From sequence record LR756504.1: DNA of 64,000 bases; one strand, written 5' to 3'. Positions 16,129 to 50,342 of this stretch are shown piece after piece (the first letter of the stretch is position 1; every line of letters starts with the position of its first letter). A program made the position numbers and the translations under genes. Under the pieces are notes generated by a model. It ran no database searches, was not told the origin of the DNA, and saw only the letters and a program-made list of their open reading frames with translations.

Positions 16129-16187
16129 TATAAAAGACTTTAAATATCTTAAACCCTAAGTTCAAAAGACTTAGGGTTTTTTGTTTT
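16078..16187 (+). promoter_or_regulatory. Transcription attenuator: protector hairpin, antiterminator and terminator
   Basis: 1:2 CTAAGTTT-GCAA-AAACTTGG (16078-16097); 2:3 AACTTGGGGT (16091-16100) pairs with ACCCTAAGTT (16153-16162); 3:4 AAACCCTAAGT/ACTTAGGGTTT (16151-16179) plus U-tract. Confidence 0.85.
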
Positions 16188-16461: not shown

Positions 16462-16541
16462 GCTCCCATGGTGGAATGGCAGACACGCTCGGCTTAAAAT
16501 CGAGTGCCTTGTGCATACAGGTTCAAGTCCTGTTGGGAGTA
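16462..16541 (+). tRNA. tRNA-Leu(UAA), long variable arm, no encoded CCA
   Basis: GCTCCCA/TGGGAGT acceptor, CTCGG-CTTAAAA-TCGAG anticodon arm, GGTTCAAGTCC T-arm. Confidence 0.92.
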
Positions 16542-16554
16542 CTAATTATCACAT

Positions 16555-16640
16555 GCCCTTGTGATGTAATGCAGCCATGAACGCCTTAGAAGCGTTTGCG
16601 AAGTAATAGTAGCGTGTAGGTTCGAGTCCTACCAAGGGTA
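16555..16640 (+). tRNA. tRNA-Leu(UAG), long variable arm
   Basis: GCCCTTG/CAAGGGT, AACGC-CTTAGAA-GCGTT, GGTTCGAGTCC. Confidence 0.92.
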
Positions 16641-16649
16641 CACAATAAT

Positions 16650-16738
16650 GGAGGGAATCTGGCTGGATGAAGAGCCAATCTTGAAAATTGGTAAATCGGT
16701 GATGAACTGGTTTGTGGGTTCGAGTCCCACTTCCTCCT
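16650..16738 (+). tRNA. tRNA-Ser(UGA)
   Basis: GGAGGGA/TTCCTCC, CCAAT-CTTGAAA-ATTGG, long variable arm, GGGTTCGAGTCCC. Confidence 0.9.
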
Positions 16739-16744
16739 CAAAAT

Positions 16745-16817
16745 GGTACTATGGCCGAGTGGATATAGGCGCACGTCTGCAAAACGTGATACATCAGTTC
16801 GAACCTGATTAGTACCT
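16745..16817 (+). tRNA. tRNA-Cys(GCA)
   Basis: GGTACTA/TAGTACC, CACGT-CTGCAAA-ACGTG, U73. Confidence 0.93.
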
Positions 16818-16824
16818 CAAAAAT

Positions 16825-16911
16825 GGAGAGTAGGCAAATATTGGTTTGTTGCGGCATCCTGCTAAGATGTTCCGTATAAAAGCGGTGAGGGTTCAATTCC
16901 CTTGCTCTCCT
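16825..16911 (+). tRNA. tRNA-Ser(GCU)
   Basis: GGAGAGT/GCTCTCC, GCATC-CTGCTAA-GATGT, long variable arm. Confidence 0.92.
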
Positions 16912-16990: not shown

Positions 16991-17695
16991 ATGAGTTTAA
17001 AAAGTGAGAAAATATTAAAGTATGCTAAAAAAATTAGAGCGATTGAATTATTAGGTGGTTGTTGCATTGAATGTGGTGTTGATAATATACATAAATTATG
17101 TTTTCACCATATAAATAGAAATGATAAAAAATTTGATATTTCGGATAAATTAGGATTAAAGTGGAACAAAATAAAAGATGAAGTTATAAAATGTGAGTTA
17201 TTATGTTTAAATTGTCATACAGAAAAACATTATAATGAAATTTCTGATAAAAAAGATATAAAAAGAAGGAGTGAAAAAAAACTATTTATTTCAATAAAGG
17301 GTGATTCATGTGAATATTGTAATTATAATAAGTGTGATGCAACATTAGAATTTCATCATCATAATGATAATAAAAATTTCTCTATAGGGAAAAAAAGATT
17401 AACTAAAAATAATTTATTATTATTTATAGAAGAAATAAACAAGTGTACTTTATTATGTAAAAATTGCCATATTCATTTACATAAAGATAGTTTCTATGAT
17501 GATAATAAAGATGAAATAATAAAAAAGAAAAATGATTATATTGATTTAAATAAAATTGATTTAGATAAATTTTTTGAATTATATAATGGTGGGTATAAAC
17601 AAGTTGAAATATCAAAACTGTTAAATTGTTCAAAAAGTAGAATCTCAGAATTAGTTTCAAAATATTTTAAAGGGAAGAATACTCAAGTGATTTAA
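16991..17695 (+). CDS. HNH homing endonuclease (two tandem CxxC-HH-CxxCH units plus C-terminal HTH) inside the tRNA cluster
   Basis: CCIECG..LCFHH..LCLNCH and CEYCN..LEFHH..LCKNCH; VEISKLLNCSKSRIS HTH; stop codon lies in the next tRNA. Confidence 0.85.
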   Translation: MSLKSEKILKYAKKIRAIELLGGCCIECGVDNIHKLCFHHINRNDKKFDISDKLGLKWNKIKDEVIKCELLCLNCHTEKHYNEISDKKDIKRRSEKKLFISIKGDSCEYCNYNKCDATLEFHHHNDNKNFSIGKKRLTKNNLLLFIEEINKCTLLCKNCHIHLHKDSFYDDNKDEIIKKKNDYIDLNKIDLDKFFELYNGGYKQVEISKLLNCSKSRISELVSKYFKGKNTQVI

Positions 17696-17763
17696 GAGGA
17701 TACATTGGAAATGTATTAGATCGGGATTAACCTGGTGCGTGAGTTTGAATCTCACTTCTTCCA
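17673..17763 (+). tRNA. tRNA-Ser(GGA)
   Basis: GGAAGAA/TTCTTCC, ATACA-TTGGAAA-TGTAT, long variable arm, T-loop TTTGAAT (non-canonical). Confidence 0.85.
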
Positions 17764-17768
17764 CAAAT

Positions 17769-17842
17769 GGCTTAGTGATGTAATTGGTAAACGTGTTCGG
17801 TTCAAACCCGAAATTTTATAGGTTCGAGTCCTATCTAAGCTA
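17769..17842 (+). tRNA. tRNA with CAA anticodon (Leu), short variable loop
   Basis: GGCTTAG/CTAAGCT, TTCGG-TTCAAAC-CCGAA, 5-nt variable loop, A73. Confidence 0.85.
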
Positions 17843-17853
17843 CAATAATAAAT

Positions 17854-17928
17854 GCCATTGTGGTGGAATTGGTTATACACACTAGTCTAAGAAACTAGGA
17901 ATTGCAGGTTCGACTCCTGTCAATGGTA
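17854..17928 (+). tRNA. tRNA with AAG anticodon (Leu, A34), short variable loop
   Basis: GCCATTG/CAATGGT, CTAGT-CTAAGAA-ACTAG, 5-nt variable loop, A73. Confidence 0.88.
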
Positions 17929-18631: not shown

Positions 18632-19068
18632 CTTGTTGGCTAAATAATTTGCAATTGTATTTTAAGTCCTCTATCATTCAAAGTATTCATGAATGTAATT
18701 ATATATTGTGCTAACATAGAGTCATCAGGATTCATATAAATGGATACTAATTCTTCTGTATTAGAACTATATTCATTATTGGTTATAAAATTTAATAGTT
18801 TATCAAAATCTGAGCGGTATTTTTTACGTCTATCGCTATCATTATACATAAAAGGAGTTCCAATAGGATTACGCAAACCAGGGTATGACATTACTTTCTT
18901 TTTTAAATAGCTAAGAAGTGATATTTTTCTATATGACATAGGAAATTTTGAAAAACCTTCTTCAAATAGATTTAAGTATTGTTCTCTTAGTTTTTCTATA
19001 TCGTTATTCATAATTTTGGGACATTTATTCCTATTTCTACTAAATGAGAATCAAAAAGTTTTAAAATG

Positions 19069-19100
19069 TTTGTATTTGTGTATATATTTTGCTATATTTG
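19069..19100 (+). promoter_or_regulatory. Bacteroidota sigma-A-type promoter
   Basis: TTTG(19069)-N20-TATATTTG(19093); explains the spurious N-terminal extension of ORF 19016. Confidence 0.75.
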
Positions 19101-19105
19101 TGTAT

Positions 19106-19687
19106 ATGAAAAAAATAAGCACATTATTTAAAAAGGATCCTAAAGATTTGGGTTTAGTAACTACTGAAGTTAGTCCTGAAAATGATTGGGTTATAAAAGG
19201 AGAAGGTATAGCAACTCGTAAATGGGATGGTATTGCTACTGCTATTATGGACGGTTGTTTATTTAAAAGGTATGATGTAAAAAAAGGAAGAACTGCTCCT
19301 ATTGGTGCTATTCCTTGTCAAGAACCTGATGAAATAACAGGACATCATCCACATTGGGTAAAATGTGAAAGAACAAATCCTGCCGATAAATATTTCTTTA
19401 TGGCATTTGATAGTTTAGAAGATAAATCTGAGGGAACATATGAATTAATTTCTGATAATTTTCAAGGTAGACATTCTAAAAAGAATCCTGAGAACATTAC
19501 AGGACATAAGCTTATTAAACATGGTGTTGAATCATTTGAATTGAATGATTTAAGCTTTGAAGCTATAAAAGCGTTTATATGCAATCCTGATAATGATGTT
19601 GAAGGTATTGTATTCCACCATAAGACTGATGGTAGAATGTGTAAAATTAAAAAATCTAATTTTGGAGTCCTTAGATATAAAATATAA
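19106..19687 (+). CDS. ATP-dependent RNA ligase-like protein (DUF5565/RLIG1-type)
   Basis: Motif I TRKWDG (KxDG), GHHPHWV, YELI, EGIVFH, KIKK at C-terminus; start moved to ATG 19106. Confidence 0.7.
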   Translation: MKKISTLFKKDPKDLGLVTTEVSPENDWVIKGEGIATRKWDGIATAIMDGCLFKRYDVKKGRTAPIGAIPCQEPDEITGHHPHWVKCERTNPADKYFFMAFDSLEDKSEGTYELISDNFQGRHSKKNPENITGHKLIKHGVESFELNDLSFEAIKAFICNPDNDVEGIVFHHKTDGRMCKIKKSNFGVLRYKI

Positions 19688-20044
19688 TGAAAAAGATTAA
19701 TCATTTATCTCTCATAGAATTAGAAGCAGAACTCGCCGAGTTAAAATCTGATACATTGTATATAAAAATACTTGAATTACAGAAACAAATTACTGTAATG
19801 AAAAATATTAACAATAAAGAAGTTATTGAAGATTTTCTTAAAGAAAATAAAAACAGACTTGTAAAAGTAAAAGGTATTGTAGATAAAGGCATTATTCAAG
19901 ATGCTTTTTTAAAAAGAAATGATATAGTTGTAAAAGTTCTTATATATGGTTATAACCGTAGTAAAAGATTTTTTAACTATAAATTAAATGAAATTGATAT
20001 TATTGGGAAATATATTCCACCTGTAGTAAAAAATATAAATTAGA

Positions 20045-20344
20045 ATGGATTTATCTTTCGAAATGTTATATGATGGTATGGAGTTCTCTGCTCGAATAAA
20101 TGAAATACCTTGTGTTGGTAAAATAGCATTGTTCGATGGTGGTGTATATTTGTGTCAAAATGTAAAATCGGGGGCATATTGTGTTCGTAATAAAAGACAT
20201 GGATATGATTTTAGTTGGGCAATATTAACAAAGAATTGTTATAAGAAAACAATAGAACGTGCATTAAAACAAAATCATGTATCTGAGTTTAAAATTTTAA
20301 ATAGAAGAAAGAATAGAATAACTGAATTTTATAATAAAAAATAG
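20045..20344 (+). CDS. Paralog family A, copy 1
   Basis: LSFExLxDGxEFSA.IxxxPCxGK...LCQ...RHGY..SW; C-terminal RKNRITEF. Confidence 0.75.
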   Translation: MDLSFEMLYDGMEFSARINEIPCVGKIALFDGGVYLCQNVKSGAYCVRNKRHGYDFSWAILTKNCYKKTIERALKQNHVSEFKILNRRKNRITEFYNKK

Positions 20345-20345
20345 A

Positions 20346-20645
20346 ATGAATTTAACATTTGAGTCATTGCAAGATGGTATGGAATTTTCCGCACATATAG
20401 ATGGGACACCATGTGAAGGTAAACTTTGTATGTATGATAACCATGTCTTTTTATGTCAAGACAAGAAAGATGGTATTGATTGTAGACGTGACAGAAGACA
20501 TGGTTATCAATTTAGTTGGATAATTAAAGATCCATATAAAAAAACTACAACACTTGATCAAGCATTGAAGATACATGGTGTAACTGGATTTAAAATTCTG
20601 AATAAAAGAAAAGATAGAATAACTGACTTTTATAATCAAAACTAA
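20346..20645 (+). CDS. Paralog family A, copy 2
   Basis: Same motif set; RKDRITDF. Confidence 0.75.
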   Translation: MNLTFESLQDGMEFSAHIDGTPCEGKLCMYDNHVFLCQDKKDGIDCRRDRRHGYQFSWIIKDPYKKTTTLDQALKIHGVTGFKILNKRKDRITDFYNQN

Positions 20646-20650
20646 TTGAA

Positions 20651-20950
20651 ATGGAATTATCTTTTGAATCATTAACAGATGGTATGGAATTTTCTGCTAA
20701 CATAGATGGAATACCATGTGTTGGTAAAATTGCTGTATTTAGTGGTTTTGTATATTTATGTCAAAATAAAAAATCTGGCGCACTTTGTGGATACGATAAA
20801 AGACATGGTTATAATAGTAGTTGGATAATTAGAAATCCTGCTAAACATGTTCCATCACTATCGGTATCGTTCGCTGAAAACAGAGTAACTGAATTTAAAA
20901 TTCTGAATAAAAGAAAAGATAGAATAACTGAATTTTATAATCAACATTAA
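20651..20950 (+). CDS. Paralog family A, copy 3
   Basis: Same motif set; RKDRITEF. Confidence 0.75.
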   Translation: MELSFESLTDGMEFSANIDGIPCVGKIAVFSGFVYLCQNKKSGALCGYDKRHGYNSSWIIRNPAKHVPSLSVSFAENRVTEFKILNKRKDRITEFYNQH

Positions 20951-20951
20951 A

Positions 20952-21257
20952 ATGGATTTATCTTTCGAATTGTTATATGATGGTATAGAATATTCTGCTA
21001 ACATTGTTGGAATACCTTGTGTAGGTAAAGTTTCTATGTTTGATAACAGTGTTTATTTATGTCAAGATAAAACAGAAGGTTCTGACTGTGGTGTTGATAG
21101 AAGACATGGTTATGATTACAGTTGGGTGATTGTAGAAAGTTTGGACGATACTCCATTAGAAGAAGCATTGGATTTAAATGATGTTAAAGATTTTAAAATA
21201 ATAAATAGAGTAGCTGATAAAAGAAAAGAAAGAATAAATAAATTAAATTTTGACTAA
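20952..21257 (+). CDS. Paralog family A, copy 4
   Basis: Same motif set; RKERINKL. Confidence 0.75.
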   Translation: MDLSFELLYDGIEYSANIVGIPCVGKVSMFDNSVYLCQDKTEGSDCGVDRRHGYDYSWVIVESLDDTPLEEALDLNDVKDFKIINRVADKRKERINKLNFD

Positions 21258-50270: not shown

Positions 50271-50342
50271 AGCAGGAGAAATGGACTTGAACCAATATAT
50301 TAATACAGGATTGTATTACATTTTACTTTAAACTATCTCCGC
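50271..50342 (-). pseudogene. Degenerate tRNA / tRNA-like element
   Basis: Minus strand GCGAGA-TAGTTTAAAAGTAAAAT...GGTTCAAGTCC...TCTCCTGC-TCA; imperfect acceptor stem, 6-nt anticodon loop; AAACTA-N15-TACAAT promoter at 50351-50377. Confidence 0.6.

What the first reader, a model, noticed from the sequence alone, without database searches (positions are those of the whole stretch)
17769..17928. Two atypical leucine tRNAs: short variable loops, one with an A34 (AAG) anticodon
Seen: tRNA(CAA) and tRNA(AAG) have 5-nt variable loops and A73, unlike the long-arm Leu(UAA/UAG) in the same cluster. Established: bacterial tRNA-Leu is normally type II, and A34 is largely restricted to tRNA-Arg(ACG), plus Leu(AAG) in some Firmicutes, where TadA makes inosine. 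Inference: anticodon-switched type I tRNAs recruited to Leu, serving CTT/TTG codons or escaping nucleases that recognise host tRNA-Leu. Their charging identity is unproven.
Basis: partly seen in the sequence, partly recalled or inferred. Interest (0 to 1): 0.65.

Follow-up and report, generated by a model that had tools for sequence, protein, structure and literature searches.

The report
Short-armed leucine tRNAs of a megaphage
Two real tRNA genes in a huge gut-type phage read leucine codons but lack the long extra arm that bacterial leucine tRNAs normally have; they are members of a widespread, little-discussed class of phage leucine tRNAs, not tRNAs of another amino acid with a swapped anticodon.

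Summary
tRNA(CAA) lies at 17769-17842 and tRNA(AAG) at 17854-17928. Both are canonical cloverleaves (Rfam 59.4 bits each) with 5-nt variable loops, G1·U72 and A73. They sit beside long-armed Leu(UAA) and Leu(UAG).

With the anticodon and variable region removed, their nearest neighbours among about 1,360 phage tRNAs are type II tRNA-Leu: 10 of 10 for AAG and 5 of 10 for CAA. Only 8 of 1,308 non-Leu tRNAs reach 5. They keep 8 or 9 of the 9 E. coli-type leucine identity elements.

Such short-loop tRNA-Leu genes recur widely:
- in cultured phages of E. coli, Vibrio, Pseudomonas, Bacteroides, Maribacter and Streptomyces;
- in more than 120 IMG/VR contigs;
- in Actinomycetota chromosomes and in tRNA arrays.

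They were not found in 400 sampled Bacteroidota, the predicted host phylum.

The phage's four Leu anticodons pair Watson-Crick with its four commonest Leu codons (97% of Leu codons). No phage LeuRS or TadA was found.

Most likely these are host-LeuRS-charged isoacceptors for UUG and CUU. Charging, expression and I34 remain untested. Verdict: a new member of a known kind, of moderate interest.

The parts
17769..17842 (+). Type I tRNA-Leu(CAA): 74 nt to A73, G1·U72, 9-nt D loop AATTGGTAA, variable loop ATTTT; followed by C74 but no CCA
   Evidence: It meets 9 of 9 E. coli-type Leu identity positions. 5 of its 10 nearest neighbours are type II Leu. Its best database matches are annotated tRNA-Leu.
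17854..17928 (+). Type I tRNA-Leu(AAG): 75 nt to A73, G1·U72, C2-G71, 10-nt D loop, variable loop GAATT, anticodon loop CUAAGAA (A34); followed by C74 but no CCA
   Evidence: It meets 8 of 9 identity positions. 10 of its 10 nearest neighbours are type II Leu. Positions 6-45 are 90-92% identical to phage type II tRNA-Leu(UAG).
17673..17763 (+). tRNA-Ser(GGA), type II, A73, 5 nt upstream of the CAA gene; probably the same precursor transcript
16462..16541 (+). tRNA-Leu(UAA), reduced long arm (12-nt variable region), G1·U72, A73
16555..16640 (+). tRNA-Leu(UAG), type II (19-nt variable region), G1·U72, A73
16648..16911 (+). tRNA-Ser(UGA), tRNA-Cys(GCA) and tRNA-Ser(GCU), the rest of the first half of the cluster
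16991..17695 (+). HNH homing-endonuclease gene splitting the tRNA cluster; its 3' end overlaps the start of tRNA-Ser(GGA)
   Evidence: PHROG 2255 and 3106, E 2e-31 and 4e-28; ORF.
19016..19687 (+). RNA ligase gene 1.1 kb downstream of the cluster (tRNA-repair-type context)
   Evidence: phrog_14301, E 1e-61.
16151..16179 (+). Strong terminator-like hairpin (12-bp stem plus T run) just upstream of the cluster, suggesting the tRNA cluster begins a new transcription unit

Best explanation
Both genes are genuine elongator leucine tRNAs of a short-variable-loop (type I) lineage that descends from ordinary long-armed bacterial or phage tRNA-Leu. They keep the parts that bacterial LeuRS is known to read: A73, U8:A14, the A15:U48 pair, the G18G19/A20a register and the T-loop elbow. 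They have lost only the extra arm, which E. coli-type LeuRS does not need. The phage has no LeuRS of its own, so the host enzyme (inferred) charges them with leucine. A CCA-adding enzyme completes the 3' end, because only C74 is encoded. Together with the long-armed Leu(UAA) and Leu(UAG) they give the AT-rich phage one Watson-Crick-matched tRNA for each of its four commonest Leu codons: CAA reads UUG and AAG reads CUU. The AAG anticodon is one substitution (U34 to A34) away from the widespread phage tRNA-Leu(UAG). Shown here: gene structure, Leu-type body, recurrence in phages, and codon match. Inferred: charging by host LeuRS, expression, and the state of A34.
For: - **Real tRNAs.** Each scores 59.4 bits on RF00005, and all 20 scored stem pairs form.
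- **Database-wide ranking.** Across 50,697 phage records the best matches of both genes are almost all annotated tRNA-Leu. The AAG gene's positions 6-45 are 90-92% identical to type II Leu(UAG) of Pseudomonas phages.
- **Nearest neighbours.** With anticodon and variable region removed and type I Leu excluded from the references, 10 of 10 (AAG) and 5 of 10 (CAA) neighbours are type II Leu. In calibration 8 of 1,308 non-Leu tRNAs reach 5 and none reaches 10, while 48 of 53 type II Leu reach 5.
- **Identity set.** The E. coli Leu identity set from PMC9976931 is met 9 of 9 (CAA) and 8 of 9 (AAG). Only 1.8% and 3.8% of non-Leu type I phage tRNAs do as well.
- **The class is functional-looking and widespread.** It occurs in cultured phages and in more than 120 IMG/VR contigs. 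Across 162 members 98% of stem cells are paired, with 3-6 pair types at 19 of the 20 scored stem positions.
- **Type I and type II Leu share the work.** They carry different anticodons in 29 of 33 loci that hold both. Pairings seen in this window recur elsewhere: type I CAA with type II TAA and/or TAG, and type I AAG with type II TAG.
- **Codon match.** Leu codons are TTA 62%, CTT 14%, TTG 12%, CTA 9%, CTC 2% and CTG 1%.
- **Precedent for charging.** S. coelicolor LeuRS leucylates its type I tRNA-Leu(CAA) (PMC6614811).
- **3' end maturation.** The full 636-kb genome encodes a CCA-adding-type nucleotidyltransferase.
Against: - No expression or aminoacylation data exist.
- PMC6614811 reports that E. 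coli LeuRS did not charge the Streptomyces type I tRNA-Leu(CAA), so charging by a host LeuRS that normally sees only type II substrates is not guaranteed.
- No type I Leu was found in 400 sampled Bacteroidota, so the host enzyme has no known native substrate of this shape.
- The CAA gene's Leu signal is weaker (5 of 10 neighbours), and its MFE fold is not the cloverleaf.
- The type I reference set was collected with a pattern that itself demands a Leu-like D loop, which inflates the identity-element frequencies for that class.
- The codon match is also what any complete Leu tRNA set would show.
Confidence: 0.6

Rival explanations
1. Structural disguise. The short-loop Leu tRNAs are replacement tRNAs whose altered architecture lets them escape a host tRNA-targeting defence, such as a nuclease or modifier that recognises tRNA-Leu or type II tRNAs by the long arm, while staying chargeable. 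Codon supply would then be secondary. This is compatible with the best explanation as to identity; it differs on why the shape is kept.
For: - The same phage carries the mirror oddities: Lys(UUU), Thr(UGU) and Asn(GUU) tRNAs with long variable arms. E. coli phage 4MG likewise combines type I Leu with a long-armed Asn tRNA and an annotated 84-nt Lys tRNA.
- An RNA ligase lies 1.1 kb downstream. In Streptomyces phage Comrade, RNA ligase and polynucleotide kinase genes lie just upstream of its tRNA-Leu genes.
- Phage tRNAs are known to neutralise anticodon nucleases (PMC11464382, PMC10264068, PMC11555353).
- Human SLFN11 selects type II tRNAs, as cited in PMC13191261, and bacterial Schlafens act in phage defence (PMC13056530).
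- Type I Leu occurs in phages whose hosts have only type II Leu.
Against: - No bacterial nuclease specific for tRNA-Leu or for the long arm was found in the papers read. The characterised bacterial Schlafen cuts Lys, Ala, Met and other tRNAs, not type II species.
- Type I and type II Leu rarely duplicate an anticodon (4 of 33 loci). This fits ordinary isoacceptors better than back-up copies.
- The phage keeps two long-armed Leu tRNAs.
Confidence: 0.15
2. Anticodon-switched tRNAs. They would be type I tRNAs of another isotype, for example Lys or Gln, that acquired Leu anticodons. They might then be charged with a non-Leu amino acid or be newly captured by LeuRS.
For: By eye, the CAA gene shares its anticodon stem and T arm with the phage's tRNA-Lys(CUU) at genome 21675, and the AAG gene shares its acceptor and D arm with tRNA-Lys(CUU) at genome 20265.
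Against: - The database-wide ranking and the calibrated neighbour test place both genes with tRNA-Leu.
- The resemblance to Lys(CUU) 20265 arises because that gene itself has a Leu-like body: 6 of its 10 elbow neighbours are type II Leu.
- The Leu identity set is intact.
- Close type I homologues in other phages carry Leu anticodons only: 127 of 129 pattern matches.
Confidence: 0.04
3. Non-functional or non-decoding tRNA-like genes: decaying duplicates, decoys or processing signals that are not used in translation.
For: The same genome holds several tRNA-like genes with defective anticodon arms. CCA is not encoded. Thermodynamic folding scores are ordinary. Expression is unverified.
Against: Both genes have the third-highest Rfam scores in the genome, perfect stems and a standard 7-nt anticodon loop with U33 and A37. 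They fill anticodon slots not otherwise covered in a 45-tRNA set. Class-wide compensatory change indicates selection for structure.
Confidence: 0.08

Closest known systems
Type I tRNA-Leu(CAA) of Streptomyces coelicolor (Fan et al. 2019, PMC6614811)
   Same: It is a bacterial-type tRNA with a Leu anticodon, a 5-nt variable loop and A73. It coexists with type II tRNA-Leu and a single LeuRS, and leucylation has been shown experimentally.
   Different: It belongs to a different sequence subfamily (U8-A9, D arm GCCC...AGGC, loop ACAGC), which in my sample is not close to type II Leu. It is chromosomal and host-encoded. The tRNAs here are of the U8-G9 subfamily, phage-encoded, in a predicted Bacteroidota system where no native type I Leu was found.
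Short-loop tRNA-Leu genes annotated in cultured phages (E. coli phage 4MG, Vibrio phage JSF10, Pseudomonas phage M5.1, Bacteroides phage DAC15, Maribacter phage Panino, Streptomyces phage Comrade; 735-kb LR756501)
   Same: They have the same architecture. JSF10, 4MG and M5.1 have nearly the same D arm as the CAA gene (UG-AUGK/ACGC-AAUUGGKAD-ACGU-G), and DAC15 has the AAG gene's GUGG...ACAC-A form. The ATTTT loop of the CAA gene is shared by JSF10, 4MG and Panino. Several also have G1·U72. They sit in tRNA clusters interrupted by HNH endonucleases.
   Different: Most carry UAG, UAA or CAA. AAG is rare: 2 of 129 pattern matches, plus 3 long-armed AAG genes. I found no experimental characterisation or discussion of them as a class.
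Animal mitochondrial tRNA-Leu (type I)
   Same: It is a leucine tRNA without the long arm, recognised through A73 and A14 (PMC9976931).
   Different: It is an organellar, structurally relaxed tRNA with a dedicated LeuRS. ScoLeuRS does not charge it (PMC6614811). It has no sequence relationship to the genes here.
A34/I34 tRNAs: bacterial tRNA-Arg(ACG) deaminated by TadA; tRNA-Leu(AAG) of eukaryotes and some Firmicutes
   Same: A at the wobble position in a four-codon box, within a CU-A34-N-G-AA loop context.
   Different: Position 35 is A, not the C of the TadA substrate. No TadA-type gene is present in the phage; its only CDA-fold protein looks like a dCMP/dCTP deaminase. I34 is therefore unproven, and A34 may read CUU unmodified.
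Phage tRNAs that neutralise anticodon nucleases (T5 tRNA-Lys versus PARIS, PMC11464382; anticodon-loop variants, PMC10264068; retron evasion, PMC11555353)
   Same: They are phage-encoded isoacceptors that differ structurally from the host's and sit in large tRNA clusters.
   Different: In the cases read, the documented evasion works through anticodon-loop (PMC10264068) or anticodon-stem-loop differences. No evidence exists for evasion through the variable arm or for tRNA-Leu.
Nematode nev-tRNAs (PMC3333845)
   Same: They are an example of class architecture and anticodon being uncoupled.
   Different: There a Leu-type type II body carries non-Leu anticodons (true anticodon switching). Here the anticodon and body agree (Leu) and only the arm is missing. 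The phage's own Lys(CUU) gene at genome 20265 is the closer analogue of nev-tRNAs.

Membership tests
tRNA (Rfam RF00005) | Cloverleaf scoring above the curated covariance-model threshold | tested here: met
   Each gene scores 59.4 bits against a gathering score of 29, on the + strand only.
tRNA (Rfam RF00005) | Conserved tertiary nucleotides and a 7-nt anticodon loop (U8, A14, G18G19, U33, purine 37, T54-psi55-C56, A58) | tested here: met
   Read directly from the parsed sequences.
Bacterial tRNA-Leu (LeuRS substrate, E. coli-type identity set, PMC9976931) | Discriminator A73 | tested here: met
   Both genes have A73. So do 53 of 53 type II and 171 of 181 type I phage Leu tRNAs, against 58% of other type I tRNAs.
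Bacterial tRNA-Leu (LeuRS substrate, E. coli-type identity set, PMC9976931) | Hinge elements: U8:A14, A15:U48, G18G19 register, A20a, U54:A58, U55, C56 | tested here: met
   The CAA gene has all of them. The AAG gene has all except A20a, which is displaced by one inserted U in the D loop.
Bacterial tRNA-Leu (LeuRS substrate, E. coli-type identity set, PMC9976931) | Sequence body nearest to known tRNA-Leu once the anticodon and variable region are ignored | tested here: met
   10 of 10 (AAG) and 5 of 10 (CAA) nearest neighbours are type II Leu. The false-positive rate is 8 of 1,308. BLAST ranking agrees.
Bacterial tRNA-Leu (LeuRS substrate, E. coli-type identity set, PMC9976931) | Long variable arm (class II architecture) | tested here: not met
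   Both have 5-nt loops. This feature defines the usual class but is reported not to be a leucine identity element for E. coli LeuRS (PMC9976931).
Bacterial tRNA-Leu (LeuRS substrate, E. coli-type identity set, PMC9976931) | Leucylation by LeuRS | not testable with these tools
   Needs an aminoacylation assay. The phage encodes MetRS but no LeuRS.
Type I (short-loop) tRNA-Leu class of phages, tRNA arrays and Actinomycetota | Leu anticodon, 4-6 nt variable loop and a Leu-type D arm | tested here: met
   Both genes match the pattern that retrieved 127 Leu-anticodon tRNAs out of 129 in IMG/VR and 119 out of 122 in cellular genomes.
TadA/ADAT substrates (I34 tRNAs) | A34 in the U33-A34-C35-G36 loop context of tRNA-Arg(ACG) | tested here: not met
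   The loop is C-U-A-A-G-A-A. A34 and G36 are present, but position 35 is A. The requirement for C35 is from my own knowledge of TadA and was not tested here.
TadA/ADAT substrates (I34 tRNAs) | A cognate deaminase available; I34 observed | not testable with these tools
   There is no MafB19/TadA-type hit in the 348-kb record. The single CDA-fold protein of the 636-kb genome resembles dCMP/dCTP deaminases. Host TadA activity on this loop is unknown.
Anticodon-switched (chimeric-identity) tRNAs | Body of one isotype carrying the anticodon of another | tested here: not met
   Body and anticodon both point to Leu.

The most novel reading that the evidence does not exclude
Phages may deliberately swap the class-defining variable arm of their tRNAs: short loops on Leu, long arms on Lys, Asn and Thr. 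Both kinds occur in this phage, and E. coli phage 4MG shows the same combination. The resulting tRNAs would remain substrates of host synthetases that ignore the arm, but would become invisible to host tRNA-targeting defences or modification enzymes that use overall tRNA shape. If so, the variable arm would be a new axis of the phage-host tRNA arms race, and type I tRNA-Leu its commonest product.
Probability: 0.15. Interest if true: 0.7.

Novelty: new member of a known kind. Interest (0 to 1): 0.4.

Why it matters
Textbooks treat the long variable arm as a fixed trait of bacterial tRNA-Leu. This window adds a megaphage example to a class of short-loop leucine tRNAs that turns out to be common in phages. 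That includes phages of E. coli, Vibrio, Pseudomonas and Bacteroides, whose own tRNA-Leu are long-armed.

Two questions become directly testable in cultured proxies such as DAC15 in B. thetaiotaomicron or 4MG in E. coli:
- Can ordinary bacterial LeuRS enzymes charge an arm-less tRNA-Leu in vivo?
- Why do phages keep this shape: economy, codon supply or defence evasion?

The A34 anticodon also offers a natural case for asking whether bacterial TadA, or unmodified A34, decodes CUU in a Bacteroidota host. For annotation, it shows that these genes should be called tRNA-Leu rather than flagged as mismatched.

Tried and rejected
- **Mirror genes on the minus strand.** CAA and AAG are the reverse complements of Gln UUG and Lys CUU. 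Rejected: Rfam matches only the + strand, the T-loop and GG D-loop signatures are on +, and G1·U72 would become an A·C mismatch.
- **Descent from the phage's Lys(CUU) genes**, which I suspected by eye. Rejected by the database ranking and the calibrated neighbour test.
- **Alternative genetic code.** Not indicated: 88.6% of the record lies in ORFs of at least 100 aa under table 11.
- **A phage LeuRS.** None found. The only class I synthetase in the full 636-kb genome is a 485-aa MetRS.
- **A phage TadA.** None found; there is only a dCMP/dCTP-deaminase-like protein.
- **Phage T5 as an experimental proxy.** Not usable: T5 has only a type II Leu(UAG).
- **Thermodynamic folding.** Uninformative, with z about -1; the CAA gene's MFE is not the cloverleaf.
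- **Sigma-70 promoter scan.** No better than shuffles (23 found against 25.5 expected), and in any case unsuited to a Bacteroidota host.
- **Literature.** Four searches for phage short-loop tRNA-Leu found no paper on the subject.
- **Pfam on the flanking ORFs.** Nothing found; PHROGs identified two of them.

Full report
**What is there**

ARAGORN finds eight + strand tRNA genes between 16462 and 17929. Rfam RF00005 confirms the two in question at 17769-17842 and 17854-17928. Each scores 59.4 bits (E 2.6e-10), well above the gathering score of 29.

Parsed by position:
- The first gene is GGCUUAG-UG-AUGU/AAUUGGUAA/ACGU-G-UUCGG-UU-CAA-AC-CCGAA-AUUUU-AUAGG/UUCGAGU/CCUAU-CUAAGCU-A.
- The second is GCCAUUG-UG-GUGG/AAUUGGUUAU/ACAC-A-CUAGU-CU-AAG-AA-ACUAG-GAAUU-GCAGG/UUCGACU/CCUGU-CAAUGGU-A.

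Both have 5-nt variable loops, G1·U72 and A73. All 20 scored stem pairs form. Leu(UAA) at 16462-16541 and Leu(UAG) at 16555-16640 have 12- and 19-nt variable regions and share G1·U72 and A73. MFE folding is unremarkable (z about -1) and gives the cloverleaf only for the AAG gene. The case rests on the covariance model and the conserved tertiary positions.

**Whose genome**

The window is G000:C1:193965-257964, an IMG/VR record of 347,857 bp and 26% G+C. The tRNA region is 100% identical to LR756504.1, a 636,363-bp 'uncultured phage'. All tRNA coordinates of G000 map onto that record with a constant offset of +378,399, wrapping around its end. G000 is therefore about 55% of that genome.

The huge-phage study states that the five genomes above 634 kb belong to the Mahaphage clade and are predicted to replicate in Bacteroidetes (PMC7162821). 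The standard code fits: 88.6% of the record lies in ORFs of at least 100 aa.

**Identity of the two tRNAs**

BLAST of each gene against 50,697 phage records returns almost only features annotated tRNA-Leu. Positions 6-45 of the AAG gene (D arm plus anticodon arm) are 90-92% identical to the type II tRNA-Leu(UAG) of Pseudomonas phages (VCM, M5.1, PaP1 and others). In the M5.1 copy, which I read base by base, the anticodon stem-loop differs only at position 34 (T to A). Its best overall neighbour is the type II Leu(UAG) of Streptomyces phage BillNye, at 77%.

To test the 'anticodon-switched' idea formally, I parsed 1,558 unique phage tRNAs. I removed the anticodon and variable region, excluded all short-loop Leu from the references, and asked for the 10 nearest neighbours.
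- The AAG gene gets 10 of 10 type II Leu.
- The CAA gene gets 5 of 10, or 6 of 10 using only the D arm, T arm and discriminator.
- In leave-one-out calibration, 48 of 53 type II Leu tRNAs have at least 5 such neighbours. Only 8 of 1,308 non-Leu tRNAs do, and none has 10.

The E. coli leucine identity set summarised in PMC9976931 comprises A73, U8:A14, A15:U48, G18G19, A20a and the U54:A58/U55/C56 elbow. The anticodon and the long arm are not part of it. The CAA gene meets this set 9 of 9 and the AAG gene 8 of 9. Only 1.8% and 3.8% of non-Leu type I phage tRNAs do as well. The two genes are thus leucine tRNAs that have lost the extra arm, not tRNAs of another isotype with a new anticodon.

**They belong to a widespread class**

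Short-loop (73-75 nt) tRNAs with Leu anticodons are annotated in many cultured phages:

| Phage | Short-loop Leu anticodons |
|---|---|
| E. coli phage 4MG | UAG, UAA |
| Vibrio phage JSF10 | UAG |
| Pseudomonas phage M5.1 | CAA |
| Streptomyces phage Comrade | CAA |
| Bacteroides crAss-like phage DAC15 | UAG, UAA |
| Maribacter phage Panino | UAG |
| 735-kb LR756501 | UAA, UAG (beside three type II Leu) |

JSF10, 4MG and M5.1 share almost the same D arm as the CAA gene, and DAC15 the AAG gene's form. The AUUUU loop of the CAA gene recurs in JSF10, 4MG and Panino.

Of the 129 matching tRNAs, 127 carry Leu anticodons: UAG 57, CAA 35, UAA 25, GAG 4, CAG 4 and AAG 2. Across 162 unique members, 98% of stem cells are paired, with 3-6 pair types at 19 of the 20 scored stem positions. 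That is the signature of tRNAs under structural selection, with the caveat that ARAGORN itself selects for paired stems.

The class splits into two subfamilies:
- A U8-G9 subfamily close to type II Leu (68 of 88 have at least 5 type II Leu neighbours). Both genes here belong to it.
- A U8-A9 subfamily that is not close to type II Leu and resembles the actinobacterial form.

It returned solitary chromosomal Leu(CAA) genes of Bifidobacteriaceae, Streptomyces and other Actinomycetota, solitary Leu(UAA) genes in some Alphaproteobacteria, and many dense tRNA arrays.

The Streptomyces case is known. S. coelicolor LeuRS leucylates its type I tRNA-Leu(CAA), whereas E. coli LeuRS does not charge that tRNA (PMC6614811). 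A looser pattern run on 401 Bacteroidota genomes (400 sampled plus the seed) found only tRNA-Phe, a few stray matches, and one short-loop Leu(UAG) inside a tRNA array of the seed MAG. The form is therefore not standard in the predicted host phylum, within the limits of a pattern that requires a canonical T loop.

**Likely function**

In 463 long ORFs, leucine codons are TTA 62%, CTT 14%, TTG 12%, CTA 9%, CTC 2% and CTG 1%. The whole 636-kb genome has 45 Rfam tRNA matches but only four with Leu anticodons. UAA, AAG, CAA and UAG pair Watson-Crick with the four commonest codons, which together make up 97% of Leu codons.

In other phages the two architectures also share the work. They carry different anticodons in 29 of 33 loci that hold both. 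Pairings seen in this window recur elsewhere: type I CAA with type II UAA and/or UAG, and type I AAG with type II UAG. This fits ordinary isoacceptors, not spare copies.

The phage encodes a MetRS but no LeuRS, and a dCMP/dCTP-deaminase-like protein but no TadA-type enzyme. Charging must therefore fall to the host LeuRS, and any I34 to the host TadA. The loop has A35 where the TadA substrate has C35. Every tRNA of the record is followed by C74 but not CCA, and the full genome encodes a CCA-adding-type nucleotidyltransferase.

I put 0.6 on 'host-charged leucine isoacceptors for UUG and CUU'. The inferred steps are expression, leucylation and the modification state of A34.

**Rivals**

- **Defence evasion by change of shape** cannot be excluded, and I find it the most interesting reading. 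The phage also has long-armed tRNAs with Lys(UUU), Thr(UGU) and Asn(GUU) anticodons. Phage 4MG pairs type I Leu with a long-armed Asn tRNA and an annotated 84-nt Lys tRNA. An RNA ligase gene lies 1.1 kb downstream. However, I found no bacterial nuclease that selects tRNA-Leu or the long arm; the characterised bacterial Schlafen cuts other tRNAs.
- **Anticodon switching** is disfavoured by the tests above.
- **Pseudogene or decoy status** is disfavoured by the high model scores, intact loops and unique anticodon slots.

**Limits**

- No isotype-specific covariance models were available.
- The type I reference set was collected with a pattern that presupposes a Leu-like D loop.
- Host assignment rests on the published prediction for genomes of this size class.

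**Verdict**

The feature is real and correctly described, and its origin is reinterpreted. It is a new member (with a rare A34 variant) of a known but under-appreciated kind. Interest is 0.4.

Noticed in passing
outside the window: G000 genome 21580-21668 (-); LR756504.1 134029-134207 (-) (locus L132:1729-1909): The phage carries tRNAs with long variable arms on isotypes that are normally type I. These are Lys(UUU) (17-nt arm, A73), Thr(UGU) (88 nt) and Asn(GUU) (88 nt). E. coli phage 4MG likewise has a long-armed Asn tRNA and an annotated 84-nt Lys tRNA. This is the mirror image of the short-loop Leu tRNAs.
   Followed up: partly
outside the window: G000 genome 20265-20337 (-): A type I tRNA with the Lys anticodon CUU has a Leu-like body. 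Its acceptor (GCAAUUG) and D arm resemble the Leu(AAG) gene, with G1·U72 and A73, and 6 of its 10 elbow neighbours are type II Leu. This is a genuine candidate for an anticodon/body mismatch.
   Followed up: partly
outside the window: G000 genome 23962, 24108, 82692, 82837, 267924, 268061 (all -); in the window a weak 66-nt relative of the theme at 50275-50340 (-): A family of six tRNA-Glu-like genes (GGCCCNUUCGUCUAGNGGCUNAGGACG...) has good acceptor, D and T arms. Their anticodon arms are abnormal, with 6-nt loops or an extended stem and a tetraloop, so they cannot decode normally. The in-window 66-nt tRNA-like hit (Rfam 31 bits) also lacks a 7-nt anticodon loop. T5 carries 'tRNA-like stable RNAs of unknown function' in its tRNA region, a possible parallel.
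   Followed up: no
window 16991-17695 (+): An HNH homing-endonuclease gene splits the tRNA cluster, and its 3' end overlaps the first 23 nt of tRNA-Ser(GGA). The same tRNA/HNH interleaving is seen in T5, DAC15 and M5.1.
   Followed up: partly
window 19016-19687 (+): An RNA ligase gene (phrog_14301, E 1e-61) lies close to the tRNA cluster. Streptomyces phage Comrade has RNA ligase and polynucleotide kinase genes just upstream of its tRNA-Leu genes. This suggests a tRNA-repair context.
   Followed up: no
window 16648-16911 and 17673-17763 (+): The phage's serine tRNAs do not have the usual bacterial G73. Ser(GCU) has U73 and Ser(GGA) has A73. In the phage sample, 75 of 103 Ser tRNAs have G73, 21 have U and 7 have A. 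G73 is reported as an antideterminant against LeuRS in E. coli, so an A73 type II 'Ser' tRNA is worth a charging test.
   Followed up: partly
whole record G000 versus LR756504.1: The IMG/VR record is listed as 100% complete with inverted terminal repeats. In fact it is collinear with about 55% of the 636-kb genome LR756504.1 (constant offset +378,399, wrapping), so the completeness call looks wrong. The full genome has 45 tRNA matches, a MetRS and a CCA-adding-type enzyme.
   Followed up: partly
all tRNA genes of G000, e.g. window 17843 and 17929: 15 of the 16 parsed tRNA genes of the record are followed by a C at position 74 but by no CCA. The exception is Ser(UGA), whose acceptor end parsed poorly. 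PMC6614811 found C74 to be the critical 3'-end base for S. coelicolor LeuRS.
   Followed up: no
loci L025, L033, L044, L054, L065 and others (IMG/VR contigs): A recurring phage tRNA-Ile(UAU) carries a 21-25 nt variable region with a conserved CCAGAUUAGCG-like motif (15 unique sequences). This is another non-canonical long-arm tRNA class.
   Followed up: no
loci L142-L250 (Bifidobacterium, Alloscardovia, Aeriscardovia, Pseudoscardovia, Senegalimassilia, Nocardiopsis, Streptomyces): Solitary chromosomal short-loop tRNA-Leu(CAA) genes are common across Actinomycetota, well beyond the single published Streptomyces case. Some Alphaproteobacteria (Rhodobacter, Paracoccus) have solitary short-loop Leu(UAA) genes.
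   Followed up: partly
window 19687-21257 (+): Five consecutive ORFs of 99-118 aa lie head to tail, possibly a tandem paralogue array. They were not examined.
   Followed up: no
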